A model generated the notes under the pieces. The model did no database searches, had not been told where the DNA came from, and saw nothing but the letters and a program-made list of their open reading frames with translations. A program made the translations under genes and the position numbers. This document shows positions 1,272-59,781 of a DNA stretch of 64,000 nt, in pieces; position 1 is the first letter of the stretch, and each line of letters begins with the position of its first letter. The stretch covers positions 1 to 64,000 of IMG/VR virus record IMGVR_UViG_3300013093_000017. One strand, written 5' to 3'.

Positions 1272-1297
1272 AAACCCGCTCCGGCGGGTTTTTCTTT
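1272..1297 (+). terminator. Rho-independent terminator
   Basis: AAACCCGC-TCCG-GCGGGTTT followed by a T tract. Confidence 0.85.
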
Positions 1298-1324
1298 GAC
1301 TAAATCACAACTTACTGTTATACT
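1296..1324 (+). promoter_or_regulatory. sigma70-type promoter with extended -10
   Basis: TTGACT-N17-TATACT with TG upstream of the -10; implies the glycosyltransferase starts at ATG 1350, not TTG 1296. Confidence 0.75.
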
Positions 1325-1349
1325 ATATCATATAATTAAATATCCGTAT

Positions 1350-4300: not shown

Positions 4301-6032
4301 TGACTGTTTAGTAAATCGTCCAGATGTGTTTGACTACTACAATAAGTTACATCAGGACTATGACTTTACCTATGGCAGTTGTTGGAGCATAGTTGACGGT
4401 ATTCCTCTACAGGCACAACCTTATCCTCCTGAAGTTAAAGCAGCAAAAGCCTACAAGGATTATAAATTTAATTGGAACTTACCGTATACTCACCTGCGTA
4501 CAATGAAAGCAGGATTATTAAACGGAGTATCGGATAGTAAATTCCGAGATGCAGATGGCAACTGGTTTAAAGCAGGTAACGATCTTGCTATATTCTATGC
4601 CGCAATAGAAAATGTAGATCCGGATAGAGTATACGCAGTATCTGATATTGTGTGTAATTACAACGATGCTAGTCCCTTAAATGACTATAAAATACATCGA
4701 GACGAACAAGATCGTACCATTGCCTCAGTCTTGGCCAATGACGATAAGAAGTATTCAGTAGTTGTTCCAACCATGTGGCGTGTTAATGATATGTTCTTAC
4801 CATTCCTTGGTCGTTTATGTAATGAGAATCTAGTTGATGAGATTATTATTATCAACAATGACAACACACGTACTCCGCAGGGGTTAACTCATCCTAAGAT
4901 TAAGATACACGACTTTGGCAAAAACATATATGTAAATCCTGCGTGGAACTTTGGAGTACGTAGCAGTCAAAATGATCGCGTGTGTATCCTTAGTGATGAT
5001 GTAGTGTTTGATACTAATCTGTTTGATAAGTTAAAAGATCTATTAACTGTTGATGCGGGTGTATTTGGATTATGTCCAGGAGATCCTGTATGGAATCAAC
5101 CACCTATCACTGATAAGACTATTGATATCATTCCGTGGACAGGTCAGCATACCTTAGGCTATGGATGTCTAATGTTTATAAACAAAAACAATTGGACTGA
5201 TATCCCGGATGGATTAAACATCTACTACGGTGATAACTTTATATTTGATTTTCAATTAGGTGCAGGTAGAACAAATTATCTAATCACTAATATGGATTTT
5301 GAAACACCAATGGCTGCTACATTGATTACCATACCCGAAGTTACCAAAGGTATGATGGAAGCAGAAACTCTAGTATATGATCAAGTGAAAGCCAATATGC
5401 TCACTCCTAAGGCACCTAAACAATTGAAAAAGATATTAATTGCAATACCTACAAATAGGAATATTGAAGCACAGACATTTAAGAGTATATACGATCTAAT
5501 TACTCCAGATGGGTGTGAAGTTGCCTTCCAATACTTTTGGGGATACCAAGTAGATCAAGTACGCAATCTAATTGCAGACTGGACCTTGCGTAATGGGTTT
5601 GATTATTTGTTCTGTGTGGATAGTGACATAGCGTTTCCGCCCGACACACTATTAAAATTAATGAGCCACAATAAAGATATTGTTAGCGGAGTGTACATTC
5701 AACGCATACCAGGTACACATACAATTGAGATAATGCGAAAAAATCCTTGGGGTGGAGTAACGCATGTTAACTGGGATGATATCAAAGGACAAGGACTAGT
5801 GCCAATTGATGGCTGCGGGTTTGGCTGTGTGTTGATTGATACTAAAGTATTACAGGCTATACCGTATCCGCACTTTCTATATCATAGTGCAATTGATCAT
5901 GCAAATACAGTAAGTGAAGATGTACATTTCTGTAATCAAGCACGGGATCATGGATTTAGTCTATGGTGTGATACCAGCATAACCTGCGAGCATATTGGAT
6001 CTAGCACATTCAGGGTTGGACAGATTACATAA
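1350..6032 (+). CDS. Five-domain glycosyltransferase (2x GT-B/GT4-like + 3x GT-A/GT2-like)
   Basis: Duplicated module (KGIGGSES / KGMGGSES; PETSGISTIES / PETYSISAVES), then VVSPFFNA...LDGDD, VVVPTMW...SDD and IAIPT...DSD...GCGFGCVLI...SEDVHFC. Confidence 0.85.
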   Translation: MKTIKIAILDCVGLNYDGTTLKKKGIGGSESSIISIAPELVKLGFEVTIFNDCDTSETSPGVYDGVTYYPMRTLGLRNFNFDIVISQRTIIPFTPEHLYDQVRQPPPRDYDPKWFHQLQRPTQLKILWQQDTFIWGDHLLEPLILNGHINEVFNISDWHIAYTTNSSHGPRRNFEVLKNHVFNTRNAINRWIDWVDVKAKDPNLFVYNASVTKGMEPLVRDIWPKLKQQLPNARLKIIGGYYNFRDQAVNEANEKVIALQKLTANDPSVEFTGIIPQPEIAAIMAQASYNLFPGAFPETSGISTIESINYNTPILGVRFGAMEESGTDSASYYIDYAIEPNGLFPWINKDWQVDRYVRMVLDAVNNPYLHQQKQYACNNVKDVSTWDTVALQWKQHFYKWMGMALDASEQARVDWINYRVRKVFGRRIANTEDIIQVAKNTDPIPLNQPRVKVAYIDIVGMAYDGDTLNRKGMGGSESAVILSAQEMAKIGFDVTVFNACDEDDNKPGVYNGVRYRPLSELAQADVYDIVISSRVVTPFITEPFYQYPQTTNRKVDYEIFKQIREQAQLKVFWMHDTFCWGDDILEELVVSGAIDEIWTLSDFHTMYIMNCSHPRMRNYEVLRNHVFTTRNGIVKYFDSVDLDSKDPNMYIFNANMSKGLDPLLNLVWPRVKQRLPNARLTVIGGHYKLGAAFSHNDEESEFMKMVGPHLTDPTITFTGIIKQEQVANLSAKASYFIYPAGLPETYSISAVESLYANTPLLTCRFGALEETAGPHSYMIDYAIVPNGLFPNINSEEQADKFVDMVVKAYNNPTEHRTRMRALDDIKDIVGWEVTALEWKHHIYSKLGLYLSPSESQRVRYTKAKYHQVFGRRYTTPEECLAPKQAVEQKIVVVSPFFNARDYVERCIASVAAQDYENYEHWLIDDVSFDGAREVAEDYIADLPADIRGKFKLIRNSDNQGAGYNYVQAIRGQSPDTIVLMLDGDDCLVNRPDVFDYYNKLHQDYDFTYGSCWSIVDGIPLQAQPYPPEVKAAKAYKDYKFNWNLPYTHLRTMKAGLLNGVSDSKFRDADGNWFKAGNDLAIFYAAIENVDPDRVYAVSDIVCNYNDASPLNDYKIHRDEQDRTIASVLANDDKKYSVVVPTMWRVNDMFLPFLGRLCNENLVDEIIIINNDNTRTPQGLTHPKIKIHDFGKNIYVNPAWNFGVRSSQNDRVCILSDDVVFDTNLFDKLKDLLTVDAGVFGLCPGDPVWNQPPITDKTIDIIPWTGQHTLGYGCLMFINKNNWTDIPDGLNIYYGDNFIFDFQLGAGRTNYLITNMDFETPMAATLITIPEVTKGMMEAETLVYDQVKANMLTPKAPKQLKKILIAIPTNRNIEAQTFKSIYDLITPDGCEVAFQYFWGYQVDQVRNLIADWTLRNGFDYLFCVDSDIAFPPDTLLKLMSHNKDIVSGVYIQRIPGTHTIEIMRKNPWGGVTHVNWDDIKGQGLVPIDGCGFGCVLIDTKVLQAIPYPHFLYHSAIDHANTVSEDVHFCNQARDHGFSLWCDTSITCEHIGSSTFRVGQIT

Positions 6033-24407: not shown

Positions 24408-24539
24408 ATGAAAACTAAGAAACTAATACGCAAGATGTACCGTGCCAGCGTTAGGCATAACCTAAAGAAACAAAAGAAATTGTGGCTTAAGATCCTTAAG
24501 AAAAGTTTGGAACATAAGCACACAGAAGTAGTACAATAA
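24408..24539 (+). CDS. 43 aa basic small protein
   Basis: TAAGGAG RBS; MKTKKLIRKMYRASVRHNLKK...; paralogue at 53834. Confidence 0.6.
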   Translation: MKTKKLIRKMYRASVRHNLKKQKKLWLKILKKSLEHKHTEVVQ

Positions 24540-24540
24540 A

Positions 24541-24795
24541 GGATTGTTGTAATTCCTTCAACGTGAAGGCATGGCGGACGGGGATTCGATTTCCCCCTCC
24601 TACACTAAGGGTATTTGAAATAGTATCTTTAGTGTGGGAGACCAGGTTTCGACGGCGTGAGATAGCGAACAAGGCAACACAGTAGGCGATGACTGTAAAT
24701 CAAGCAAAATCTATAAATGCAAGCAATGATAGCATTTTCGCACTTGCGGCCTAAAATCCGTTGTGCCGAGTTTAACTAACTTGGGAACAGAATAG
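24541..24795 (+). ncRNA. ssrA: Two-piece (circularly permuted) tmRNA
   Basis: T-arm and acceptor 3' strand CTCCTAC-A (24597-24604) come before the 5' strand GTGGGAG (24634-24640) with G3.U70, joined by an intervening hairpin; tag frame 24719-24754 ASNDSIFALAA*. Confidence 0.88.
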
Positions 24796-25572
24796 TTACA
24801 GGGTCTTCGGACCCTGTTCTTTTGATAATTTATTCTGTTTTCTAGTCTCTAACATTTTTTTGACAGATTCAGGATTTTTCATAGGATTTAATCGACTGTC
24901 GCCAAATCCTGTATCAGATTTTCCTTTATTCCACGCAGGTGCTACCCTGTTGTGCTTTTTTCCAACTTGCGATGGGCGTATTTTGGCCTGATATCGATTC
25001 CGGCAAGTCGCATTGCAATAGTAATGTTCTTTAGGTGAATGATGGCAAAACTCTTCATAGATTAATTCAGCATTACAGTTAGTACACTTATAATATCGGA
25101 GTTCTTTTGGTTTCTTTTTTGTTTTATTAATTTCTCGCATTATTTCTGCTTGCCGACTTCTTCTTTCATCCGATGCAGATACCCAAGATCGTTTAGCCTG
25201 CAATCCGTCTGCATTATGATTATTTGATATCATATAGGCAATGTGCTCTTTGCGAACAATTTCATAACATTTAGAATTATTACGTTTTAATCGATCACAC
25301 ATAAGTTTAAAGGCCTGTGATTGCTTGCCACCGTATGCTTTCCATAATAATCTATGGGCAACATAATGTTGTCGTAGGGTTAATGCTGCTTTATTCCAGG
25401 GATATTTCTTAAATGATTTAAATTCTGGGAATAAATCAGACGATTTAGGGCATATATGATGATCTTCAGTTTCAAGTAGATGAGTAGTAACAATGCATTG
25501 ATTAATAAATTTAATATATCTATTAAGGTAATGTGAATTATGAGGTTTAGATTTTAATATATCAGCAAACAT
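24796..25572 (-). mobile_element. Free-standing HNH homing endonuclease (Mob-like)
   Basis: HHICPK...N...LTLRQHYVAHRLL; CxxC...CxxxC; TATAAATA on the minus strand at 25593-25600. Confidence 0.8.
24798..24823. terminator. Terminator overlapping the HNH gene 3' end
   Basis: ACAGGGTC-TTCG-GACCCTGT followed by a T tract. Confidence 0.8.
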
Positions 25573-49755: not shown

Positions 49756-50211
49756 ATGCGAACAATTGTTCGAATACTAATCTGCAATCTTTTAATGGTC
49801 GCCAGTTTGTCTGCCGCACCTCTACAAGACTTTCAATTCAAAAGTCCAAGTTTCAACGGCAATGGATATGGCACCTATGTGCTAACCATTCAGAACGAAG
49901 AATATACCCGTACACAAGCAATACAACAGGCATTAGAAGCAGCTAAACAAGCCGCAGCCACCGCAGCAGCTAATACTCCATTAAATCAATTCTTAACTAA
50001 TTTAGAAAGCCGTGTACTGGCACAGGTAAGTCAAAACCTAGCCACAGCTATGTTTGCTCCGGGAGCGGCCACAAGTGGAACATTTAACTTCCAAGGTAAT
50101 ACAATATTTTGGCAGAACAATGGCGGTAGTATAACATTACAAGTAACAGATAGTTTGGGCAATCAAACAACTATCAATGTGCCATTAGGATCATTTACAT
50201 TTACACCATAA
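49756..50211 (+). CDS. csgF: Curli assembly protein CsgF-like
   Basis: Signal peptide, FQFKSPSFNGNG, FLTNLESRVLAQVS, GNQTTINVP. Confidence 0.85.
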   Translation: MRTIVRILICNLLMVASLSAAPLQDFQFKSPSFNGNGYGTYVLTIQNEEYTRTQAIQQALEAAKQAAATAAANTPLNQFLTNLESRVLAQVSQNLATAMFAPGAATSGTFNFQGNTIFWQNNGGSITLQVTDSLGNQTTINVPLGSFTFTP

Positions 50212-50993
50212 TGAAAAAACTATTAATCATCGCATTGTTATTATTGTTAAACGGCTGTGCTACTATACAGAAAGCAGGGCTTGAGCATGCTCCGGAACTA
50301 GCAAAAAACAAAATGGAAAAAGAGTTCGATGCTATTCCGGCTCCAGCAGGTCCTAGAGTGACTGTGGCAGTCTACAGCTTTAAAGATATGACCGGTCAGC
50401 GTAGAAATACACCAAACATAGCCAGCTTTAGCACTGCGGTAACGCAAGGTGCTGAGCCATTCTTAATCAATGCTCTACAAGAAGTAGGACATGGACAATG
50501 GTTTGATGTTGTGGAACGTGTAAACGTAGATAACTTGATCAAAGAACGTACTATTATTAAACAGATGCGAGATGCCTATGAAGGTAAAGAAGCTAAACCT
50601 CTAGCACCATTACAATTTGCCGGTATCATTATGGAAGGCGGTATTGTTGGATTTGATAGCAGTACAGAATCAGGTGGCATTGCTTATAAATGGTTAGGTA
50701 TTGGTCCACAGACACAATATTCAAAAGATATCGTAACAGTTAGTCTACGTGCGGTGAGTGTTAGTACAGGCAAAGTACTAACCACAGTAACCGTTACCAA
50801 AACTATTTACAGTACCGCAGACAGCATGGCTGTATTGAAGTTCTTCAAAGGTGGCACACAGGCTTTTGAATTTGAAAGTGGCTTAACTATTAACGAACCA
50901 GAAACACTAGCAGTTAAGACCACAGTCGAAGCGGCTGTGGTAGAGTTGATCAAGGAAGGTCAACAGAAAGGAATTTGGGACTATCGTAAGTAA
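50211..50993 (+). CDS. csgG: Curli secretion lipoprotein CsgG
   Basis: Lipobox LNGC, VAVYSFKDMTGQR, STAVTQGA, WFDVVER, EGGIVGFD. Confidence 0.93.
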   Translation: MKKLLIIALLLLLNGCATIQKAGLEHAPELAKNKMEKEFDAIPAPAGPRVTVAVYSFKDMTGQRRNTPNIASFSTAVTQGAEPFLINALQEVGHGQWFDVVERVNVDNLIKERTIIKQMRDAYEGKEAKPLAPLQFAGIIMEGGIVGFDSSTESGGIAYKWLGIGPQTQYSKDIVTVSLRAVSVSTGKVLTTVTVTKTIYSTADSMAVLKFFKGGTQAFEFESGLTINEPETLAVKTTVEAAVVELIKEGQQKGIWDYRK

Positions 50994-51057
50994 GACCCAA
51001 ATAATAAGAATCCGTCATTCGGATCATTAAGACAGTAACATGTCAAGGAGCAAGCAA

Positions 51058-51885
51058 ATGAAAAAGTCATATAAACTTTTGAGTTTAATTTTAGCATTAA
51101 CAACATCAGCAGCATTTGGTGCAGATAACAGCATCTATATTGAACAAAGCGGTAGCACATCTAATGTTACTGTAACTCAAGACGGTGCCGGCAACGTAAT
51201 GCGTGGTATACAAGGATCAGGTAGTGGTAATACTACTCCTTCTGTGATCTTTGGTAATAGCAATAATGTTACAATTGATCAAGTCGGTACTGGTAATACA
51301 TTAGACCTTGGTATTCAAACCAGCACAGTTAACGGTGTAACTAATGGCAACAACTTTAGCTATACAGTTAATGGTAATAATGCTACAGCTATTATTGATA
51401 GTAATAATAATGGACAAGGTGTAAGTGGAAGTAACAATGTATCAGTTACTCAAAACGGTAATAACGCTAATCTTGATATTAATCTATTAGGTAATACTAA
51501 TAATATTACAGCAACTACCACAGGTGGTGCAAATAACAGTTTAGTATCTACTATTAATGGTAACGATAATAGTCAAACTATTAGTGTAACTGGTGCTAGC
51601 AATAGTCTTGTGGTTAATCAAGGTATCGGCGGTAGTGCGTTAACAACTGGACAATCTGCTACAACTAACAGCAATGGTAGTGTAGATATTACTATCGTAG
51701 GCACTAGCAACGTTCTTAATCTAGCACAGACCAGTGCTGGATATACCAACACCGCAGTGGTTAGTTTAGATGGATCAAGCAACGTTACTAATATCACACA
51801 AAATGCCGCAGCAGGTAACACTACTGTAAATCTTCACAGTGTAGGCAGCAGCAATAACTTTACGATCAATACTAACGCTCACTAA
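51058..51885 (+). CDS. Secreted curlin-like repeat protein
   Basis: Signal peptide; repeats of I/V-x-Q-x-G-x-x-N; Asn/Gly/Ser/Thr-rich. Confidence 0.75.
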   Translation: MKKSYKLLSLILALTTSAAFGADNSIYIEQSGSTSNVTVTQDGAGNVMRGIQGSGSGNTTPSVIFGNSNNVTIDQVGTGNTLDLGIQTSTVNGVTNGNNFSYTVNGNNATAIIDSNNNGQGVSGSNNVSVTQNGNNANLDINLLGNTNNITATTTGGANNSLVSTINGNDNSQTISVTGASNSLVVNQGIGGSALTTGQSATTNSNGSVDITIVGTSNVLNLAQTSAGYTNTAVVSLDGSSNVTNITQNAAAGNTTVNLHSVGSSNNFTINTNAH

Positions 51886-51896
51886 GGGCTACAGTA

Positions 51897-53018
51897 ATGC
51901 GTAAACTACTACTTCTTGTGCTGTTCAGCATTTCACTGGACAGCACAGCTTCAGTAGGCACAATCACAGAACAAACATCAGTGCCTGGCAGTATTCTGCG
52001 GGCAAGCAAAACATTGCCGGGAACCAAAGGCCAAGGTGTAGAAATGGCAGATGCTATTGCCACAACCAAAGGCAAGGTTGGTATTACATTTGAAGATCAA
52101 ACCAAAGTAGAAGTTAATGATAACAGTAAATTAGTTATTGATGATTTTGTCTACGATCCAAAGAAAGGATCGGGTAAACTAGCAATGAAATTCACTGCTG
52201 GCACAGTGCGCTATGCTAGTGGTGCTATTGCACACAATGATCCAAGTAAGGTAGCCTTAAACACCCCTAGCGCGACCATAGCAGTGCGCGGTACTGACTT
52301 CAGTGCTACTGTAGACGAAACTGGTGCCAGCACTATCGTCCTATTGCCAAGTTGTCCCCTAGGTTGGGTTGATATTGAACGTGACTGCAAGACGGGTGCT
52401 ATTGATGTTATGAACGAGGCAGGTAGTGTTAGTCTAACCAAACCATTCCAAGGCACCAAGGTAGAGAATCGTAATACAGCACCAATGAAGCCTGCTATAT
52501 TAAATCTAACCTTAGATACTATTAATAATCTATTAATCATTAGCCCACCTAAAGAAATTGACAAACACAAAATAGAAAAAGGTGATGCCGAAACTAAGGA
52601 AGCAGGTAATATGCTTGATCAAAACTTTCTTAAACAAGATTTCCTAAAGAATGAATTTGATGTAGAAGGGCCTGTTTGGACCGACCCACTTAATCAACCA
52701 CTGCTTCAACAGTATTTTCTAGAGAACATCTTTAACATATTGTCAGATCAACTGGCAGAAGAATCACAAAATTTATTAAAGAATCAACTTGATCCAAAAA
52801 CGCAGTTATTGCCAGACTGGTTTAAATCAAGTCAGATCACAGTAGCACAAGATCCTACCAGTGTAACTCTATGTCGCCCAGACGGCAGTAGCAATGTAGA
52901 GTGCGTTAAGACTCCACACGATCAAAGCACCACAGTTTATATGACACAGGGTAGTGTGACATTTAAGAATCGTATCAATCAAGGAAATAATACTATTATT
53001 ATTCTAAAACAAAACTAA
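51897..53018 (+). CDS. Secreted FecR-domain protein
   Basis: ITFEDQTKVEVNDNSKL, GTVRYASG, TPSATIAVRGTDF. Confidence 0.85.
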   Translation: MRKLLLLVLFSISLDSTASVGTITEQTSVPGSILRASKTLPGTKGQGVEMADAIATTKGKVGITFEDQTKVEVNDNSKLVIDDFVYDPKKGSGKLAMKFTAGTVRYASGAIAHNDPSKVALNTPSATIAVRGTDFSATVDETGASTIVLLPSCPLGWVDIERDCKTGAIDVMNEAGSVSLTKPFQGTKVENRNTAPMKPAILNLTLDTINNLLIISPPKEIDKHKIEKGDAETKEAGNMLDQNFLKQDFLKNEFDVEGPVWTDPLNQPLLQQYFLENIFNILSDQLAEESQNLLKNQLDPKTQLLPDWFKSSQITVAQDPTSVTLCRPDGSSNVECVKTPHDQSTTVYMTQGSVTFKNRINQGNNTIIILKQN

Positions 53019-53581
53019 TGCGTAAACTACTCTTACTTTTATTATTTTGTACTAGTGCATGGGCCGATTCGGGCATCTACATAGATCAGGTTGGCAGCAA
53101 TAACCAAATCACTATTACACAAGACGGAGATGGACATTCTATAAATCTTACTCTAGGTAAAGATAGCCCACTTGACAATTCTATTATTAATATCACACAA
53201 CAAGGACTAGGCGCCAAGAATGCCAATATAGATATGCCCGGCGGCTATAATAACACAGTGCGAGTCAGTCAAGACGGCAACGGAAGTCAAACTGCGAATA
53301 TTACCTCACTCAGTGGTGCTGCTAATTCTGTTGATATAACCCAATCCGGTGCGAGTAATAATACATTTAATATACTAGGTCTCGGTATTAACAATGCTAA
53401 TACTATTACTGCAACACAATCAGGCAATGCAGGCGCTGACAAGAGTTTCACCCTTAATATGAGCAATACCAATGGTGCTACAGTAAATATACAACAAACA
53501 AATCCCTCTCAACCAAATACTGGCAGTATGAGCATTAACTGTTATACAGGCTGCGGAACATACAGTTACATAAGAAACTAG
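53018..53581 (+). CDS. Second curlin-like repeat protein
   Basis: IDQVGSNN, ITQDGDG, ITQQG, VSQDGNG, ITQSG repeats. Confidence 0.75.
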   Translation: MRKLLLLLLFCTSAWADSGIYIDQVGSNNQITITQDGDGHSINLTLGKDSPLDNSIINITQQGLGAKNANIDMPGGYNNTVRVSQDGNGSQTANITSLSGAANSVDITQSGASNNTFNILGLGINNANTITATQSGNAGADKSFTLNMSNTNGATVNIQQTNPSQPNTGSMSINCYTGCGTYSYIRN

Positions 53582-53590
53582 GAGTAGTAA

Positions 53591-53755
53591 ATGACAAATC
53601 TAAGCGAAGCAATAGTTAGACTACATGATGTGGCAAGAAAGATTGAAAGAGAATTAGATTCAAAAAAATACAGTTCTGAAATACTTGAGATAGCTGATCT
53701 AATTACCAAAGTAGATTATAAACTTCGCATAGAAGAATACGACGCAAGAGATTAA
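53591..53755 (+). CDS. 54 aa hypothetical protein
   Basis: AGGAG RBS; MTNLSEAIVRLHDVARKIE... Confidence 0.55.
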   Translation: MTNLSEAIVRLHDVARKIERELDSKKYSSEILEIADLITKVDYKLRIEEYDARD

Positions 53756-53784
53756 TGTAATCAAACTGTAACACAAATTGTAAT
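53756..53784 (+). promoter_or_regulatory. Pho-box-like direct repeats
   Basis: TGTAAT, TGTAAC and TGTAAT at 53756, 53767 and 53779. Confidence 0.45.
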
Positions 53785-53833: not shown

Positions 53834-53992
53834 ATGAAACAACGTAAATTATTAAAACAGTTGTATCAAGCGTGCCTCGAACACGATACAGACAAGATCC
53901 AAGAGCTCAAGTTATTAGAGTTTCAGAAAATTTTGAAACACAAGTCCGAAGGTAAGTCGTTTGGTAGCAAATGGACTTTGGTAAGGATTTAA
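53834..53992 (+). CDS. 52 aa small protein, paralogue of 24408
   Basis: AAGGAG RBS; MKQRKLLKQLYQACLEH... Confidence 0.6.
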   Translation: MKQRKLLKQLYQACLEHDTDKIQELKLLEFQKILKHKSEGKSFGSKWTLVRI

Positions 53993-54001
53993 TCTTATTA
54001 C

Positions 54002-54027
54002 AAACCCGCTTCGGCGGGTTTATTTTT
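54002..54027 (+). terminator. Rho-independent terminator
   Basis: AAACCCGC-TTCG-GCGGGTTT. Confidence 0.8.
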
Positions 54028-54031
54028 GTTC

Positions 54032-54049
54032 TTGTAATATTGTTGTAAT
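54032..54049 (+). promoter_or_regulatory. Pho-box-like repeat upstream of the plcP-like gene
   Basis: TGTAAT at 54033 and 54044 (11-bp period). Confidence 0.5.
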
Positions 54050-54071
54050 CTAATTATGTTTAAATATTAGC

Positions 54072-54833
54072 ATGACTAAAGACATCATCAAATATAAAAC
54101 CATCTGTATATCAGATGTTCATCTTGGCACAAAAGACTGTCAAGCCGATGTATTAAACGACTTCCTCAAATATCATACCTGTGAAAATTTATTCCTAATC
54201 GGTGACATCATCGATGGGTGGAAAATACAGCAGAATAAATGGCGCTGGCGTCAGAGCCATTCAAACGTAATACGCAGAATATTAGGTATGGGTAAACACG
54301 GAGTTCGTGTTACCTATGTAACTGGCAATCATGACGAGTTCCTTCGTCCGTTTGTTGCTGAAACATTCCGTATGGGAAATATACATATTGTTAACCATGC
54401 AGAATATCGTAGCATAGATGGTGATTTATATTTTATCACTCATGGTGATATGTTCGACGGTATAACTCGTGCAGCCAAATGGTTAAGTTTCTTAGGTGAC
54501 AAAGCCTATGATTTTGTCTTATGGATCAATACAAGATTTAACTACATACGCCACAAAATGGGGTTTGGATATTGGAGTTTAAGTAAATACCTTAAACATA
54601 AAGTAAAGAAAGCATTAGATTTTATCTTTGAGTTTGAAATAACTGTAACTGATTATGCTGCTAAACGTGGGTTTGATGGAGTAATATGTGGACACATACA
54701 CACTCCGGAAATCAAAACTATGCCAAACGGTATTATCTATATGAATGACGGTGACTGGGTAGAAAGTTGTTCAGCCCTAGTAGAACACTATGATGGCCGT
54801 TGGGAAATAGTGTATTGGAATAAATCTATATAA
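54072..54833 (+). CDS. PlcP-like phospholipase C (LpxH-family metallophosphoesterase)
   Basis: SDVHLG, GDIIDGW, GNHDEFLR, HGD, CGHIH, NDGDWVESCSALVE. Confidence 0.85.
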   Translation: MTKDIIKYKTICISDVHLGTKDCQADVLNDFLKYHTCENLFLIGDIIDGWKIQQNKWRWRQSHSNVIRRILGMGKHGVRVTYVTGNHDEFLRPFVAETFRMGNIHIVNHAEYRSIDGDLYFITHGDMFDGITRAAKWLSFLGDKAYDFVLWINTRFNYIRHKMGFGYWSLSKYLKHKVKKALDFIFEFEITVTDYAAKRGFDGVICGHIHTPEIKTMPNGIIYMNDGDWVESCSALVEHYDGRWEIVYWNKSI

Positions 54834-55003
54834 TGTGGTTGCTGATGATATTATCCGTCAGCATAACTAATCCAAATGACATTCCTGGCATCGTAACTAT
54901 AGATTATAAAACGCAACAAGAATGCGAAGCAGCAATCGCTTCGATGACTTCGTGGTTAAAGTTTGATTCATTTAAGGTAACTGCGCAATGCCTGAAAAAA
55001 TAA
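54833..55003 (+). CDS. 56 aa small exported protein
   Basis: Hydrophobic N-terminus, Cys pair; overlaps both neighbours. Confidence 0.5.
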   Translation: MWLLMILSVSITNPNDIPGIVTIDYKTQQECEAAIASMTSWLKFDSFKVTAQCLKK

Positions 55004-56007
55004 TATTAATAATAACAGACAATCTAAGGAATCAAGTAAATGGCGTGGTCACAACGTTTAAAAGTATCGAAGCGCACGCAGCTTCTGATGGGTATCGCAT
55101 TGTTTATCTTGATCCCGGGCAGTTCGCTCATATTGATTGCCCTGGCTACCCTGAAGTTAAACTCAGCTGGCCTTGGAAGATTGGTCGTAAAATTAAGACG
55201 ATGGCTCCGGATTATATTCACATCGCAACCGAAGGTCCCTTAGGATTAGCCTCACGGTGTTATTTAGATTTCTTAGGTATAAGATATAACACCAGTTATC
55301 ATACCAAATTTCCAGAATTCTTAAACAAGATGTACAAGATTCCAGAATGGATAACCTACGCTTATATGCGCTGGTTCCATAAACACAGCGGTCGTGTGCT
55401 GACCACAACACAAACAATGGTTGATGATTTGCGGGCACGTGGATTTGATGGTGATATCATTCCTTGGACACGCGGCGTAGATCGTTCAATATTTAACAGC
55501 CTGCACCGAGGTGAAACAGTAGCAGGTCGCCCAATCTTAGTCAGTGTTGGCCGCGTTAGTAAAGAGAAAAACCTAGATGAGTTTTGCCAAATAGATTATC
55601 CGGACTGTACTAAGATAGTAGTAGGTGATGGACCGTATCGAAAAGAATTGGAATCCAAGTATCCAGATGTTATATTTGCTGGTGCTAAGTTTGGAACCAG
55701 TCTAGCAGAATATTATGCCAATGCGGATGTATTTGTGTTTACTAGTTTAACTGACACATTTGGCATCGTGATTATAGAAGCCTTAGCCTGTGGTACTCCA
55801 GTAGCGGCATATCCAGTACCGGGGCCTATTGATATATTAGAGCAAGGAGTTACTGGCTATATGTTCCGCGGGGATCTACGTACCGCAATAGACGGATGTC
55901 TAACATTAGACCGCAATGAGGTTGAACAGGCTAGCCAAAAATGGTCTTGGCAACACTGCTGGGACATTTTTCGTACCAATCTAATAGAAAAACAAAAAGA
56001 TTACTAA
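54988..56007 (+). CDS. GT4 glycosyltransferase (Agt-like glycolipid synthase)
   Basis: QVNGVVTT, IHIATEGPLG, YHTKFPE, VGRVSKEKN, DTFGIVIIEALACGTPV. Confidence 0.85.
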   Translation: MPEKIILIITDNLRNQVNGVVTTFKSIEAHAASDGYRIVYLDPGQFAHIDCPGYPEVKLSWPWKIGRKIKTMAPDYIHIATEGPLGLASRCYLDFLGIRYNTSYHTKFPEFLNKMYKIPEWITYAYMRWFHKHSGRVLTTTQTMVDDLRARGFDGDIIPWTRGVDRSIFNSLHRGETVAGRPILVSVGRVSKEKNLDEFCQIDYPDCTKIVVGDGPYRKELESKYPDVIFAGAKFGTSLAEYYANADVFVFTSLTDTFGIVIIEALACGTPVAAYPVPGPIDILEQGVTGYMFRGDLRTAIDGCLTLDRNEVEQASQKWSWQHCWDIFRTNLIEKQKDY

Positions 56008-56209: not shown

Positions 56210-56281
56210 ATGTGGACTAAACCAGCAGCAACAGAAATGCGTTTCGGGTTTGAAGTCACGATGTATGTAATGAACAAGTAA
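56210..56281 (+). CDS. pqqA: PQQ precursor peptide PqqA, copy 1
   Basis: CAGGAG RBS; MWTKPAATEMRFGFEVTMYVMNK with E-x-x-x-Y. Confidence 0.92.
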   Translation: MWTKPAATEMRFGFEVTMYVMNK

Positions 56282-56343
56282 TTGTTCGTTCTACAGAGTG
56301 ATCAAACAAAATTGTTTTAATTAATCTCTAAAGGAGAAATATT

Positions 56344-56415
56344 ATGTGGACTAAACCAGCAGCTACTGAAATGCGTTTCGGGTTTGAAGTCACGATGTAT
56401 GTAATGAACAAGTAA
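56344..56415 (+). CDS. pqqA: PQQ precursor peptide PqqA, copy 2
   Basis: AAGGAG RBS; identical peptide with synonymous differences. Confidence 0.92.
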   Translation: MWTKPAATEMRFGFEVTMYVMNK

Positions 56416-56442
56416 TTGTTCTTACTATAAAGTGCATGAAAG

Positions 56443-56471
56443 AAAAAGCTCTACTTAGGTAGGGCTTTTTT
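56443..56471. terminator. Terminator overlapping the HNH gene end
   Basis: AAAAAGCTCTAC-TTAG-GTAGGGCTTTTTT. Confidence 0.75.
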
Positions 56472-56924
56472 ATTGGCTCTAGTTTGGGCTAAGGTTGCTC
56501 TAATCTTTGCGCGAGTTTCTTCACTAACCGCATGTCCTTTACGACTTTCTACCCAATTAGCTTTGTGCTCTTCGGATTTTACTTTTCCTTTCATTGCTTC
56601 AGACCGTTTTTTATTAATCTCTTCCCAGCGTCCTTCATCCTTTAGCCGTTGTAGATATTTTTTAGCACCTTCTGAATATCTTTCTTTTTCTTCATCGGTG
56701 CGTTTCTTACCCTTGTTAGCCATACCTTGTTTCATCCTTAATATTTCTTCTTGTCCTATGCGTCCAGACAATGCTTGCCAAGCACAGTAGTCTTGCCAAT
56801 TGCCGTGTTGTTCGTACAGCAAGCGATGTGCTTCTGCATGTTCTTCTACAGTGAGTTCTATTAGATTACTAGGATCGTCGTTGCCGCCTAGGTATTGTGG
56901 TATAATGTGATGTATATGTTTCAT
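56451..56924 (-). mobile_element. Free-standing HNH homing endonuclease with NUMOD3-like repeats
   Basis: HHIIPQYLGGNDDPSNLIELTVEEHAEAH; GKVKSEEHK and GHAVSEETRAKI repeats. Confidence 0.85.
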
Positions 56925-57078
56925 ACAGTTATTTATCATTGTTACTTCATAACCTATAAGTAAAATTTATTATGGTCATTAAAAAATACAATTAAAAAAA
57001 CCTATTAAAACCACTTGATTAATAGGTAAACTTGGATATATAATATATGTATATTAACAATTTAACAAGGAGAGTAAT

Positions 57079-57642
57079 ATGAAGATCGGACAACAAGTTC
57101 AACCATTCACTGCACAAGCATACCGTCAAGGTAAGTTTATCGAAGTTTCAGATCAAGCCCTACAAGGTAAATGGAGCATTGTGTTCTTTTACCCAGCAGA
57201 CTTTACATTTGTCTGCCCAACAGAACTAGCAGACCTACAAGATGTCTACGCAAGTGATTTCCAAGCACTAGGGGTTGAAGTATATAGCGTAAGTACAGAC
57301 ACACACTTTGTTCATAAAGCATGGGCCGATGCCACAGACACAATCCGTAATATCCAATATACAATGATTGGAGACCCTAATCATCAACTTGCTACACAGT
57401 TTGGTGTGTTAATTGAAGGCGAAGGACTAGCTGACCGTGGTACATTTGTCATTGATCCAGATGGTAAGATTCAAATCATTGAAATTAATCCAGGTGGTGT
57501 AGGTCGTGATGCTAAAGAATTACTACGCAAAGTTAAGGCAGCAAAATACACACGCGAACATCCAGGTGAAGTATGTCCAGCTAAATGGACAGAAGGTTCA
57601 GCTACTCTAGCACCTAGTTTAGACCTAGTAGGTAAACTATAA
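57079..57642 (+). CDS. ahpC: Peroxiredoxin AhpC
   Basis: [14 protein letters not shown] and GEVCPAKW. Confidence 0.96.
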
Positions 57643-57759: not shown

Positions 57760-59781
57760 ATGAGAAAACTTTTATTGAGTCCTTGGACTGCTTTATTAAC
57801 ACTTTGTCTTATTGTTGGATTGCGAATAGTAGATCCTCCATTTGTTGAAAGCGTAAGATTACGCTACTTTGATACACTAATAACCAGCAAATCTCCCACC
57901 ACTAATAATATCTACACTGTAAACATCGATGAAGCAACCTTAGACAAGTACGGACAATGGCCATTTAAGCGTGACATCTACGCTAATCTAATTGATAGTT
58001 TATACGCTCATAATGCTGGTCTAGTTGTTTGGGATATTATGATGCCAGAAAAGGATCGTCAAGGTGGCGATGCAACACTAGCCTCGGTACTGCAAACACA
58101 ACATAATGTTATTCTTACCAACATGCCTGCACAGGCCAGCAAGAATATTCCACGTAAACCAGGCAGTGCTGTAATTGGCAGTGACTATTTAGATACTATA
58201 ATTAACTATCCAGGCATTATTGCCAACATTCCAGAATTAGAAAAGAATGCCGCAGGCGTTGGTATTGCTAACACATTCCCAGAAGTAGATGGTGTTAACC
58301 GCAGACTACCTTTGTTTGTGGCCAGTAACGGTAATTTATATCCTAGTATTCCATTAGAAGTTCTACGTGTTCTAGTAAACACAACTACATTTCAAGTTAA
58401 GCTAAATGCCAACGGTGTTGAGAAAATGCGTGTTCCTGGATTTAATCCTATTAGCACAGACAGCCTAGGCCGTATCTGGGTAGACTGGAGTCAAAAATCA
58501 CAACAGGTATCAGCAGTTAATTTACCTAAAGACTTTGGCGGTGCTGTGGTCATTGTAGGTCTAAGTGCCGCAGGTTTAGCTAATCCGGTAGCAACCAGCA
58601 TGGGACCGGTATGGCCACAAGACATGCAGGCTGCTGTTGTTGGTACATTGGCCAACAACGTACACATTGAACGTCCAGACTGGGCAGATAGTGCTGAAAT
58701 ATTAGCATTGGCTCTAGTTGGTTTGTTGTTATTGTTCTTAACACGTTGGACCTACGTGGGATTAGCAAGTGTTGTAGTATTATCAGTAGGTGGTATCGCA
58801 GGTAGTATGTACGCATTTAGTCACGGTCTATGGCTATTTGATGCTACTGCATTTACTGTGGGCATAGTATTAGTATCATTACATGCCTATGGTGTGAAGT
58901 TTATAAGTGAGTTTTTACAGAAGCAGCAAATTAAGAAACAGTTTGGCACATACCTATCACCGGCAATGGTAGAGAAATTACAGAAGAATCCAGAACTATT
59001 AACATTAGGAGGGGAATCACGTGAATTATCAATCATGTTTACAGATGTCAGGGGCTTTACGAGTATTAGCGAGCATTACGGCAAAGATGTTCAAGGACTT
59101 ACTAAAATAATGAACCGTTATATGACAGCAATGACAGCAAAGATTATCGAGAATGAAGGCACCCTAGACAAGTATATCGGCGATGCGCAAATGGCTTTTT
59201 GGAATGCCCCTCTTGATGATCCGCAACATGCTAAGAATGCCGTTCGAACAGCACTAGAAATGATGGAGAGCTTAGATGCATTTAATAAAGAAGTTACAGC
59301 AGAGGGTATCCCAGCTTTCGGAATGGGATTGGGAATTAATACAGGAGTGGTCGTCGTTGGTAATATGGGTAGCAGTCAACGTTTCGATTATACTTGTCTT
59401 GGTGATGCTGTCAACTTGGCATCTCGCTTAGAAGGACAGAGCAAGCCATGCGGTGTTAAGATGATACTAGGTCCTGATACCGCAGCACAGGTTGAAGACG
59501 AATTCCCTACAGTAGAATTAGATTGCATTGCTGTTAAAGGTAAGACAGAAGGTGTTAAGATCTACACACTATCAACCTATCAACCTGAACACTATAAATT
59601 ACATAAGAAATATTTACTGGCTTACTATAATGGCGAATGGGAAGGTGCTATATTCCTAGCTAAACAGCTAAAGAAAGACGGTCCTACAGAAATGCGTCAA
59701 TACTATTATAATATGATAGAGCGTATGGAAGAAGGTAAACCAGAAAACTGGGACGGAACATTTAGGGCAACTAGTAAGTAA
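57760..59781 (+). CDS. CHASE2-domain membrane adenylate cyclase (class III)
   Basis: CHASE2 (IDEATL..YGQWP), 3 TM helices, FTDVRGFT, DKYIGD, RFDYT.LGDAVNLASRLE. Confidence 0.92.
   Translation: MRKLLLSPWTALLTLCLIVGLRIVDPPFVESVRLRYFDTLITSKSPTTNNIYTVNIDEATLDKYGQWPFKRDIYANLIDSLYAHNAGLVVWDIMMPEKDRQGGDATLASVLQTQHNVILTNMPAQASKNIPRKPGSAVIGSDYLDTIINYPGIIANIPELEKNAAGVGIANTFPEVDGVNRRLPLFVASNGNLYPSIPLEVLRVLVNTTTFQVKLNANGVEKMRVPGFNPISTDSLGRIWVDWSQKSQQVSAVNLPKDFGGAVVIVGLSAAGLANPVATSMGPVWPQDMQAAVVGTLANNVHIERPDWADSAEILALALVGLLLLFLTRWTYVGLASVVVLSVGGIAGSMYAFSHGLWLFDATAFTVGIVLVSLHAYGVKFISEFLQKQQIKKQFGTYLSPAMVEKLQKNPELLTLGGESRELSIMFTDVRGFTSISEHYGKDVQGLTKIMNRYMTAMTAKIIENEGTLDKYIGDAQMAFWNAPLDDPQHAKNAVRTALEMMESLDAFNKEVTAEGIPAFGMGLGINTGVVVVGNMGSSQRFDYTCLGDAVNLASRLEGQSKPCGVKMILGPDTAAQVEDEFPTVELDCIAVKGKTEGVKIYTLSTYQPEHYKLHKKYLLAYYNGEWEGAIFLAKQLKKDGPTEMRQYYYNMIERMEEGKPENWDGTFRATSK

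What the first reader, a model, noticed from the sequence alone, without database searches (positions are those of the whole stretch)
54072..56007. Phage-encoded PlcP/Agt-like membrane lipid remodelling pair
Seen: an LpxH-family metallophosphoesterase with the NDGDWVES motif is followed by a GT4 glycosyltransferase. Established: in Sinorhizobium, Agrobacterium and marine heterotrophs, PlcP cleaves phospholipids to DAG and Agt makes phosphorus-free glycolipids under P starvation. Inference: the phage frees phosphate from the host membrane for its genome synthesis while keeping the membrane intact.
Basis: partly seen in the sequence, partly recalled or inferred. Interest (0 to 1): 0.72.

Follow-up and report, generated by a model that had tools for sequence, protein, structure and literature searches.

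The report
Phage-borne PlcP–Agt lipid renovation cassette
A large freshwater phage carries a three-gene operon whose enzymes match the bacterial pair that swaps phosphorus-containing membrane lipids for sugar lipids when phosphate is scarce, which suggests that viruses can take phosphorus from their host's membrane.

Summary
Window 54072-56007 holds a 253-aa metallophosphoesterase with the NDGDWVES motif and a 339-aa GT4 glycosyltransferase.

- **The esterase is PlcP-like, not LpxH.** It falls far below both NCBIfam LpxH cut-offs. It scores 360 bits on an HMM built only from bacterial agt-linked homologues and nothing on a true-LpxH HMM. It branches apart from LpxH (support 100).
- **The glycosyltransferase is Agt/GTcp-like.** It keeps all 14 residues shown by mutagenesis to be essential in the SAR11 glycolipid synthase GTcp.
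- **The gene order matches bacteria.** In 53 of 80 bacterial loci the same two genes are adjacent in the same order.
- **The record is viral.** It is a 230-kb IMG/VR virus record from lake metagenomes. At least 476 viral contigs encode relatives, which form a virus-only clade at 64-89% identity; bacteria reach at most 55%.
- **A Pho-box-like repeat precedes the operon.** TTGTAAT-N4-TTGTAAT recurs upstream of divergent phage copies (15 of 76 regions; shuffles give 0.17).

Enzyme activity, PhoB control and the phosphorus-supply purpose remain inferences. I found no paper describing phage PlcP; deposited phage records call it LpxH.

The parts
54002..54021 (+). Intrinsic-terminator hairpin with a T-run. 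It closes the upstream unit and marks the left edge of the cassette.
   Evidence: 8 pairs, 5 of them GC, T-rich tail. DNA similarity to the related phage locus L004 begins at 54016. L004 also has a terminator directly before its box.
54032..54049 (+). Pho-box-like direct repeat TTGTAAT-ATTG-TTGTAAT with an 11-bp period. It is the candidate binding site for the host PhoB.
   Evidence: It is the only exact copy in the window and the top PWM hit in the 230-kb genome. It is kept in L004 with a different spacer. A match with at most 2 mismatches occurs in 15 of 76 distinct viral upstream regions, against a shuffle mean of 0.17 and maximum of 2. It matches 10 of 14 positions of CTGTCATNNNNCTGTCAT (consensus from PMC8528852).
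54060..54065 (+). Possible -10 hexamer TTAAAT, 10 bp after the box and 6 nt before the ATG. This would give a very short or absent leader.
   Evidence: Read from the sequence. No sigma-70 -35/-10 pair is found upstream, as expected for a Pho-type promoter. Inference only.
54072..54833 (+). plcP-like gene: a calcineurin-type metallophosphoesterase of 253 aa, predicted to be a Mn-dependent phospholipase C acting on membrane glycerophospholipids.
54833..55003 (+). Conserved phage-only small ORF of 56 aa with a hydrophobic N-terminus and two invariant Cys. It is translationally coupled to both neighbours. Function unknown.
   Evidence: 29 distinct homologues lie directly after plcP in viral loci and none in the 80 bacterial loci. 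It matches phrog_5579, unknown function, at E 6.4e-5. Atlas clusters are 95-100% viral. The complex prediction with PlcP gave no answer.
54988..56007 (+). agt-like gene: a GT4, GT-B-fold glycosyltransferase of 339 aa, predicted to be a UDP-sugar:diacylglycerol glycosyltransferase.
53755..53772 (+). Weaker second copy of the box (ATGTAATCAAACTGTAAC), ahead of the 52-aa ORF at 53834-53992.
   Evidence: Second-best PWM hit in the genome at 17.3, which is within the range of shuffled sequence. Its membership in the unit is uncertain.

Best explanation
This is a self-contained phage cassette made of a terminator, a Pho-box-like promoter, plcP, a small phage-specific gene and agt. It reproduces the bacterial PlcP-Agt lipid renovation pathway.

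Proposed mechanism:
1. During infection of a phosphate-starved host, probably a freshwater streamlined methylotroph, host PhoB activates the cassette through the direct repeat.
2. The cytoplasmic, membrane-associated metallophosphoesterase cuts glycerophospholipids (PG, PE) into diacylglycerol plus a phosphorylated head group. The phosphate in that head group then enters the nucleotide pool.
3. The GT4 enzyme transfers glucose or glucuronate from a UDP-sugar onto the diacylglycerol. This makes phosphorus-free glycolipids that keep the bilayer functional until lysis.

Shown here: family identity of both enzymes, exclusion of LpxH, operon synteny with bacteria, conservation of catalytic, UDP-sugar and DAG-binding residues, a virus-specific clade, and a conserved upstream direct repeat.

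Inferred: enzyme activities and substrates, PhoB binding, timing, and the benefit to phage DNA synthesis.
For: **Not LpxH**
- NCBIfam LpxH equivalogs score 43.9 and 29.4 bits against cut-offs of 134 and 190.
- There is no sequence hit to any PDB chain, the LpxH structures included.
- Five of five bacterial genomes with a homologue also hold a separate LpxH over the cut-off. The homologue in one of those genomes (L095, Pseudomonas) scores 41 bits.
- An HMM built from 53 bacterial agt-linked homologues gives the window protein 359.6 bits. The LpxH HMM gives no hit. E. coli LpxH scores 32.7 bits on the PlcP HMM.
- In the tree, the 6 LpxH sequences split from the 165 PlcP-like sequences with support 100.

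**Family level**
- Identity to bacterial homologues is 47-55%, including Pseudomonas, Pelagibacteraceae and Azospirillum. Characterised PlcPs share 46-47% with each other (PMC8528852).
- All metal-binding residues are invariant in 40 sequences: D15, H17, D45, N86, H87, H124, H208, H210.
- The fold is LpxH-like with a two-helix insertion at 130-198.

**Synteny**
- A homologue of the GT (37-47% identity) lies directly downstream on the same strand in 53 of 80 bacterial loci. This is the plcP-agt arrangement described in PMC4796936.

**The glycosyltransferase**
- Pelagibacteraceae orthologues carry all 14 GTcp residues at the published numbering.
- All 14 align to identical residues in the window protein: G19, G83, G86, H105, T161, R162, R189, K194, D256, T257, F258, G259, E264, W321.
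- The motifs are GRVSKEKN and FTSLTDTFG, with the clade-specific Asp.

**Regulation and phosphorus context**
- A 1.3-Mb genome sharing pqqA DNA with the phage has a classical triple Pho box before its own plcP.
- Pelagiphage Mosig has plcP divergent from pstS.
- PhoH is present in the genome.
- The habitat is lake water.
- The phage record (229,675 bp, estimated 65% complete) is 18% of that 1,306,966-bp chromosome.

**Transcription hint**
- One 1,207-nt contig from a freshwater RNA library spans the plcP and agt of a relative.
Against: - No activity, substrate or expression datum exists for any phage copy.
- I could not fetch experimentally characterised PlcP or Agt sequences (S. meliloti, Phaeobacter MED193, HTCC7211, P. 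aeruginosa, A. tumefaciens). The link to them runs through operon-defined bacterial homologues and published residue numbers.
- 42 of 80 related viral loci have no GT within reach, so keeping the membrane intact is not a general requirement.
- The box differs from the Pho consensus at 4 of 14 positions and is found in only about a fifth of phage copies. It could bind another regulator.
- The box sits so close to the ATG that a leaderless transcript must be assumed.
- The RNA-library contig may derive from contaminating DNA.
- The host is inferred only from pqqA DNA similarity, a beta-type tmRNA and GC content.
Confidence: 0.66

Rival explanations
1. The enzymes are the same, but the purpose is envelope remodelling rather than phosphorus economy. 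Replacing phospholipids with glycolipids would change surface or membrane properties so that competing phages, grazers or membrane-active compounds are kept out during the long infection of a jumbo phage.
For: Lipid remodelling is reported to change phage attachment and predator-prey outcomes (titles and abstracts of PMC9938194, PMC9457565 and PMC9804370). Glycosyltransferases of pelagimyophages have been read as a means of avoiding coinfection (PMC7029224). The cassette lies among envelope-related genes, namely the curli-like cluster at 49756-53581.
Against: The Pho-box-like element and the pstS neighbour in Mosig point to phosphate status. Half of the phage copies lack the GT, and an esterase alone would not build a new surface. 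PlcP products are inner-membrane lipids, not exposed receptors.
Confidence: 0.14
2. The esterase mainly serves lysis or carbon and energy supply. Degrading inner-membrane phospholipid would weaken the membrane or release diacylglycerol and fatty acids. The GT, where present, would merely detoxify excess diacylglycerol, and the small Cys protein would be a membrane partner.
For: The esterase occurs without a GT in 42 of 80 viral loci, and the small hydrophobic-N-terminus protein accompanies it in about 30. Neighbouring phage curli pores have been proposed to time lysis (PMC9004378).
Against: No holin or endolysin context was seen next to the cassette. The upstream repeat resembles a nutrient-responsive site, not a late promoter shared with other genes, and it is unique in the genome. 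The complex prediction gave no support for a PlcP-small protein pair, though it is not evidence against one.
Confidence: 0.12
3. The annotation in public records is right: the esterase is LpxH (UDP-2,3-diacylglucosamine diphosphatase) and the GT is an LPS or cell-wall glycosyltransferase, so the pair acts on lipid A and LPS.
For: JGI names homologues LpxH and the GT 'involved in cell wall biosynthesis'. The Mosig and S-SRM01 records use the LpxH name. The best structural neighbours are LpxH crystal structures.
Against: The protein falls below both curated LpxH cut-offs, gets no hit on a true-LpxH HMM and sits in a separate clade. It coexists with a real LpxH in all 5 bacterial genomes tested. 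Identity to LpxH structures is only 17-20%. The GT keeps the DAG-binding residues of GTcp.
Confidence: 0.03

Closest known systems
Bacterial PlcP-Agt lipid renovation operon (Sinorhizobium meliloti SMc00171; Phaeobacter sp. MED193; 'Ca. Pelagibacter' HTCC7211 PB7211_983/960 = PlcP/GTcp; P. aeruginosa PA3219/PA3218; Methylosinus trichosporium OB3b)
   Same: Same two protein families in the same order and orientation. Metal-binding and GTcp catalytic, UDP-sugar and DAG residues are all kept. A Pho-box-like element lies upstream, as in bacteria. Identity is 47-55% for PlcP and 37-48% for Agt, within the spread among characterised members.
   Different: It is encoded by a virus and belongs to a virus-only clade at 64-89% identity. 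An extra phage-specific 56-aa gene sits between the two genes. The half-sites are TTGTAAT instead of CTGTCAT. Many phage relatives have dropped the GT.
LpxH (UDP-2,3-diacylglucosamine diphosphatase; PDB 5K8K, 5B49, 6PH9)
   Same: Calcineurin-like metallophosphoesterase core with a helical insertion that caps the active site. It is the best structural match, with TM about 0.6 over the full length.
   Different: Identity is 17-20%. The window protein falls below the curated family cut-offs, is a separate paralogue that coexists with LpxH in the same genomes, and has a different genomic partner.
Phosphate-stress auxiliary genes of marine phages (pstS, phoA, phoH)
   Same: A host Pho-regulon function carried by a phage, apparently with a host-type regulatory box. 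Pelagiphage Mosig places its plcP-like gene next to pstS, and this genome carries phoH.
   Different: It acts on an internal phosphorus store, the membrane lipids, rather than on uptake from outside. That cyanophage pstS and phoA respond to host PhoB is my own background knowledge and was not checked here.
Pelagibacter phage Mosig gene Mosig_00120 ('putative UDP-2,3-diacylglucosamine hydrolase') and Synechococcus phage S-SRM01 QPX48289
   Same: These are homologues in isolated, sequenced phages, at 47% and 32% identity. Mosig branches as sister to the viral clade.
   Different: No GT or small ORF is adjacent. They are annotated as LpxH, and no lipid-remodelling role is discussed in the papers I could read.

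Membership tests
PlcP (Mn-dependent metallophosphoesterase phospholipase C of lipid renovation) | Calcineurin-like metallophosphoesterase with a complete set of metal-binding motifs | tested here: met
   PF00149 at 6.1e-10. D15, H17, D45, N86, H87, H124, H208 and H210 are invariant across 40 homologues. The model has pLDDT 87.9.
PlcP (Mn-dependent metallophosphoesterase phospholipase C of lipid renovation) | Groups with agt-linked bacterial PlcP homologues and apart from LpxH | tested here: met
   359.6 bits on the bacterial operon-defined HMM and no hit on the LpxH HMM. The tree splits the two with support 100.
PlcP (Mn-dependent metallophosphoesterase phospholipase C of lipid renovation) | Genomic linkage to a gene for a phosphorus-free lipid synthase (agt, pgt, btaAB) | tested here: met
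   An agt-like GT lies 155 nt downstream in the same operon. The same arrangement occurs in 53 of 80 bacterial and 23 of 80 viral loci.
PlcP (Mn-dependent metallophosphoesterase phospholipase C of lipid renovation) | Direct sequence comparison with experimentally characterised PlcPs (S. meliloti, MED193, HTCC7211, PAO1) | not tested
   No tool delivered those sequences. Proxies were used: Pelagibacteraceae single-cell genomes and Pseudomonas species at 52-55% identity.
PlcP (Mn-dependent metallophosphoesterase phospholipase C of lipid renovation) | Pho-regulon control (Pho box upstream) | tested here: inconclusive
   A direct repeat with an 11-bp period matches 10 of 14 consensus positions and is conserved among phage copies. 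PhoB binding is unproven.
PlcP (Mn-dependent metallophosphoesterase phospholipase C of lipid renovation) | Hydrolysis of PG, PE or PC to diacylglycerol, dependent on Mn2+ | not testable with these tools
   Needs an enzyme assay or lipidomics.
LpxH | Score above the curated equivalog cut-offs (NF003743, TIGR01854) | tested here: not met
   43.9 bits against 134 and 29.4 bits against 190.35. The genome search with TIGR01854 finds nothing in the phage record.
LpxH | Orthology, i.e. the only copy of the family in genomes that make lipid A by the LpxH route | tested here: not met
   Five of five genomes with a homologue also hold a separate LpxH over the cut-off.
LpxH | LpxH-type fold: metallophosphoesterase core plus helical lid | tested here: met
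   The top 25 PDB hits and top 30 Swiss-Prot model hits are LpxH, with TM 0.51-0.61 by query (mostly 0.55 or above). This shows a shared superfamily, not membership.
Agt/GTcp clade of GT4 (UDP-sugar:diacylglycerol glycosyltransferase) | GT-B fold, GT4 domains | tested here: met
   Pfam GT4 domains. The model has pLDDT 92.3 and matches BshA, MshA and PimA.
Agt/GTcp clade of GT4 (UDP-sugar:diacylglycerol glycosyltransferase) | Catalytic dyad His104-Asp256 (Asp, not Glu) and motifs GRVAXEKN / FPSXTDTFG | tested here: met
   H105 and D256 are present, with motifs GRVSKEKN and FTSLTDTFG.
Agt/GTcp clade of GT4 (UDP-sugar:diacylglycerol glycosyltransferase) | DAG-binding residues Thr162, Arg163, Trp320 and donor-site residues Gly16, Gly82, Gly85, Arg190, Lys195, Thr257, Phe258, Gly259, Glu264 | tested here: met
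   All are identical in the alignment with Pelagibacteraceae orthologues, which carry the published numbering.
Agt/GTcp clade of GT4 (UDP-sugar:diacylglycerol glycosyltransferase) | Synthesis of MGlc-DAG or MGlcA-DAG from DAG and UDP-sugars | not testable with these tools
   Needs heterologous expression and lipid mass spectrometry.

The most novel reading that the evidence does not exclude
A virus-specific three-gene module (PlcP, a phage-only two-cysteine miniprotein and Agt) wired to the host's phosphate sensor is a widespread strategy by which aquatic phages dismantle host membrane phospholipid to pay for their DNA. If so, part of the 'bacterial' plcP signal used as a phosphorus-stress marker in metagenomes, and part of the glycolipid pool in phosphorus-poor waters, would be virus-driven. 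The miniprotein would be a new regulator or membrane tether of PlcP.
Probability: 0.3. Interest if true: 0.8.

Novelty: new variant of a known kind. Interest (0 to 1): 0.66.

Why it matters
Phosphorus limits phage production in lakes and oceans. The known phage answers (pstS, phoA, phoH) concern uptake.

A phage-encoded route to the cell's second large phosphorus store, the membrane, would add a new class of auxiliary metabolic gene. It would connect viral infection to the glycolipid signatures used by biogeochemists. It would also mean that plcP counts in metagenomes mix viral and cellular genes: at least 476 IMG/VR contigs carry it, and deposited records call it LpxH.

The idea is directly testable with two genes and standard lipidomics.

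Tried and rejected
- **Characterised PlcP paper.** I could not obtain the PlcP biochemistry paper (PMC6052262). PlcP-specific substrate residues were therefore not checked.
- **Complex prediction.** PlcP plus the 56-aa protein returned 'no answer' and is not used as evidence.
- **Relatives search.** The order-level sample returned no taxon names, so the host link rests on pqqA DNA similarity only.
- **General promoter motif.** I tested whether the repeat is a general phage promoter motif and rejected this. There is one exact copy in the window and the overall 3-mismatch count is at chance. It is the top hit in the genome, with the next hits inside shuffle range.
- **Small ORF in Mosig.** The small ORF downstream of the Mosig gene is unrelated to the window's small ORF.
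- **PstS.** It was not found in the record.
- **Literature.** Searches for PlcP with phage, viral or auxiliary metabolic gene terms found no report of a phage-encoded PlcP. The library lacks most subscription journals, so absence is not proof.
- **Metatranscriptomes.** The reads come only from relatives at under 90% identity, and DNA carry-over cannot be excluded.
Full report
**What is there**

The window is the first 64 kb of a 229,675-bp IMG/VR virus record, linear and estimated 65% complete. It has the content of a large tailed phage:
- ribonucleotide reductase, GroEL, a radical-SAM protein and tail-like proteins;
- a tmRNA of betaproteobacterial type and one tRNA.

At the reported coordinates there are three tightly packed ORFs on the + strand:
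- 54072-54833: a 253-aa calcineurin-like metallophosphoesterase containing NDGDWVES.
- 54833-55003: a 56-aa ORF. Its ATG overlaps the esterase stop, and its end overlaps the next start by 16 nt.
- 54988-56007: a 339-aa GT4 glycosyltransferase.

A strong terminator hairpin at 54002-54021 precedes the unit. Logan contigs of the source lake sample reproduce the stretch without a single difference.

**The esterase is not LpxH**

- The two NCBIfam LpxH equivalog models give 43.9 and 29.4 bits, against curated cut-offs of 134 and 190.
- phmmer finds no PDB chain, although many LpxH structures are there.
- The AlphaFold model (pLDDT 87.9) does find LpxH as its best structural neighbour, but at 17-20% identity and TM about 0.6. 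The fold class is shared, including a two-helix insertion at residues 130-198, but the family is not.
- Among species-representative genomes the best homologues reach only 47-55% identity. They include Caulobacteraceae, Burkholderiales, Pseudomonas, Pelagibacteraceae and Azospirillum.
- All five of those genomes that I searched also have a separate LpxH above the cut-off. The homologue in one of those genomes (L095, Pseudomonas) scores 41 bits.
- An HMM built only from 53 bacterial homologues that sit directly upstream of an agt-like gene gives the window protein 359.6 bits.
- In a 171-row tree, the six LpxH sequences separate from all 165 PlcP-like sequences with support 100.
- Characterised PlcPs share only 46-47% identity with each other (PMC8528852), so 47-55% lies inside the family's spread.
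- All metal ligands are invariant in a 40-sequence alignment.

**The glycosyltransferase is of the Agt/GTcp kind**

The paper on the SAR11 enzyme GTcp (PMC8231724) defines the clade by:
- a His104-Asp256 dyad, where Asp cannot be replaced by Glu;
- the motifs GRVAXEKN and FPSXTDTFG;
- donor-site residues Gly16, Gly82, Gly85, Arg190, Lys195, Thr257, Phe258, Gly259 and Glu264;
- DAG-binding residues His104, Thr162, Arg163 and Trp320.

All of these were probed by mutagenesis. Two Pelagibacteraceae single-cell genomes fetched here carry, downstream of their plcP, a 335-aa protein with all 14 residues at exactly those numbers. Aligned to them, the window protein has the identical residue at every one of the 14 positions, with motifs GRVSKEKN and FTSLTDTFG. 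The model is a confident GT-B fold (pLDDT 92.3) matching BshA, MshA and PimA. No NCBIfam glycosyltransferase model comes near its cut-off.

**Synteny**

In 53 of the 80 bacterial loci, a homologue of this GT (37-47% identity over its full length) lies directly downstream of the esterase homologue on the same strand (list). This is the 'type 2' plcP-agt neighbourhood of Sebastian et al. (PMC4796936). That neighbourhood was validated genetically in Phaeobacter, SAR11, P. aeruginosa and Methylosinus.

**A viral lineage, not a recent capture**

- Protein searches return thousands of homologues at 67-89% identity. No species-representative bacterial genome exceeds 55%.
The best 80 are at 64-79% identity.
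- In the tree, the window protein sits in a clade of 83 sequences that are all viral (support 99). Pelagiphage Mosig is sister to it (support 86), and Pelagibacteraceae are among the nearest bacteria, with weak support. Both samples were chosen by similarity to the query, so this shows a large viral clade, not its exact origin.
- The closest relative (89%) lies on 250-490-kb contigs with the same three genes.
- DNA similarity to that relative runs from 54016 to 55985 only. Its upstream neighbour, an AdoHcy hydrolase, has a 94-97% identical copy 30 kb away in this genome. The cassette therefore moves as a unit.
- Of the 80 viral loci, 23 have the GT adjacent, 8 have it within 2 kb and 42 lack it.

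**The small ORF**

- It recurs directly after the esterase in about 30 viral loci, as 29 distinct sequences, with or without the GT. It never appears in the bacterial loci.
- It has a short hydrophobic N-terminus, a PxDxPG turn and two invariant cysteines.
- It matches phrog_5579, of unknown function. It also matches virus-only Atlas clusters.
- A complex prediction with the esterase gave no answer.
- Its role is open.

**Regulation**

Between the terminator and the ATG lies TTGTAAT-ATTG-TTGTAAT. Ten bases later comes TTAAAT, followed by six bases and then the ATG.
- The repeat is the only exact copy in the window and the top position-weight hit in the whole record.
- The 89%-relative has the same half-sites with a different spacer.
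- Among 76 distinct upstream regions of viral homologues, 15 have a match with at most two mismatches. Shuffles give a mean of 0.17 and a maximum of 2. Eleven have an exact 7-mer repeat with an 11-bp period in the last 70 nt, against a shuffle mean of 0.36.
- Most of these matches lie 9-32 nt from the start codon.
- Some copies read CTGTAAT-N4-CTGTAAT, which is 12 of 14 positions of the Pho box consensus CTGTCAT-N4-CTGTCAT.

A host-side comparison supports the reading.
- A 1.3-Mb genome of the order that contains Acidovorax holds three pqqA-like stretches, 82-87% identical to the phage's tandem pqqA genes. This points to a streamlined methylotroph.
- That genome has its own plcP homologue preceded by TGTCAT-N5-TGACAC-N5-TGTCAC.
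- The homologue sits in an island with OlsA-like and OlsB-like acyltransferases and an agt-like gene.

I therefore read the phage repeat as a Pho-box derivative. This is an inference.

**Ecological frame**

The sequence occurs in lake and freshwater metagenomes. The record carries phoH but no pstS. Mosig places its copy back-to-back with pstS. The phage record alone equals 18% of the 1,306,966-bp chromosome mentioned above. A handful of progeny genomes therefore exceeds the phosphorus in host DNA, which makes the membrane a relevant reserve. This is my reasoning and has not been measured.

**What is known**

Papers on pelagimyophages and the OM43 phage Melnitz describe the curli genes, the tmRNA and 'LPS' glycosyltransferases. 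They never mention LpxH, PlcP or lipid remodelling. Searches combining PlcP with phage, viral or auxiliary metabolic genes gave nothing relevant. Public records name the gene LpxH.

**Verdict**

The identity of both enzymes is well supported. The mechanism is the known bacterial one, carried by a virus with a virus-specific addition. The purpose, phosphorus supply, is the best-supported reading but remains unproven.

Noticed in passing
window 56211-56282 and 56345-56416 (+): Two tandem 23-codon ORFs ([23 protein letters not shown]), each with its own ribosome-binding site. They look like PqqA, the precursor peptide of the methanol-dehydrogenase cofactor PQQ (E-x3-Y motif; this identification is from my own knowledge). 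The DNA is 80-88% identical to stretches in Methylophilales phages. It is 82-87% identical to three loci in each of two 1.3-Mb bacterial genomes. Depth in one lake RNA library is very high here. This points to a methylotroph host.
   Followed up: partly
window 49756-53581 (+): Curli-like cluster made of five genes. They are CsgF-like (weak), CsgG (163 bits), a 281-aa protein with weak CsgB/CsgA matches, a FecR-domain protein, and a 187-aa protein with a Curlin repeat. Published phage curli clusters were said to lack the fibre subunits CsgA and CsgB (PMC7029224, PMC9004378). This phage may encode them.
   Followed up: partly
window 24494-24820 (+): Phage-encoded tmRNA matching the betaproteobacterial model at 165 bits, and also the permuted-tmRNA model. 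The tag peptide is ASNDSIFALAA.
   Followed up: no
window 57079-57642 and 57760-59781 (+); 56451-56939 (-): A full AhpC peroxiredoxin (310 bits, above the 272-bit cut-off), a CHASE2-sensor adenylate/guanylate cyclase of 673 aa, and an HNH endonuclease lie just downstream of the cassette.
   Followed up: no
G000:139181-139951 (outside the window; locus L188 1378-2148): A short (256-aa) UDP-glucose/GDP-mannose dehydrogenase-family protein that lacks the C-terminal domain. It is 61% identical to a gene that lies directly upstream of plcP in another phage group (L007). It could supply UDP-glucuronate for an Agt, or it may be unrelated. GTP cyclohydrolase I lies next to it.
   Followed up: partly
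locus L004 1078-5931 (closest relative, 250-490-kb contigs): In this relative the same cassette is preceded by a hexapeptide transferase, a TauD-family dioxygenase, an acyl-carrier protein, a fatty-acid desaturase and an AdoHcy hydrolase. It is followed by an outer-membrane beta-barrel protein. This suggests a larger lipid or envelope-modifying region in these jumbo phages.
   Followed up: no
locus L183 3263-7517 (1.3-Mb bacterial genome G379): A compact lipid-renovation island in the putative host lineage. It contains an OlsA-like acyltransferase, plcP with a triple Pho box, an OlsB-like N-acyltransferase, an unknown gene and a convergent agt-like gene.
   Followed up: partly
window 53591-53755 and 53834-53992 (+): Two small ORFs (54 and 52 aa) with no family match. 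The second is preceded by a weaker copy of the direct repeat at 53755 and followed by the terminator at 54002.
   Followed up: no
window 1296-6032 (+): A 1578-aa ORF with two glycosyltransferase-like regions matching phage families phrog_2170, phrog_12406 and phrog_1574.
   Followed up: no
locus L001 4853-5004 (Pelagibacter phage Mosig): The pstS-plcP intergenic region holds TTAACA-N5-TTAACA with an 11-bp period, plus further TTAAC copies. It may be a Pho box of another sequence type.
   Followed up: no
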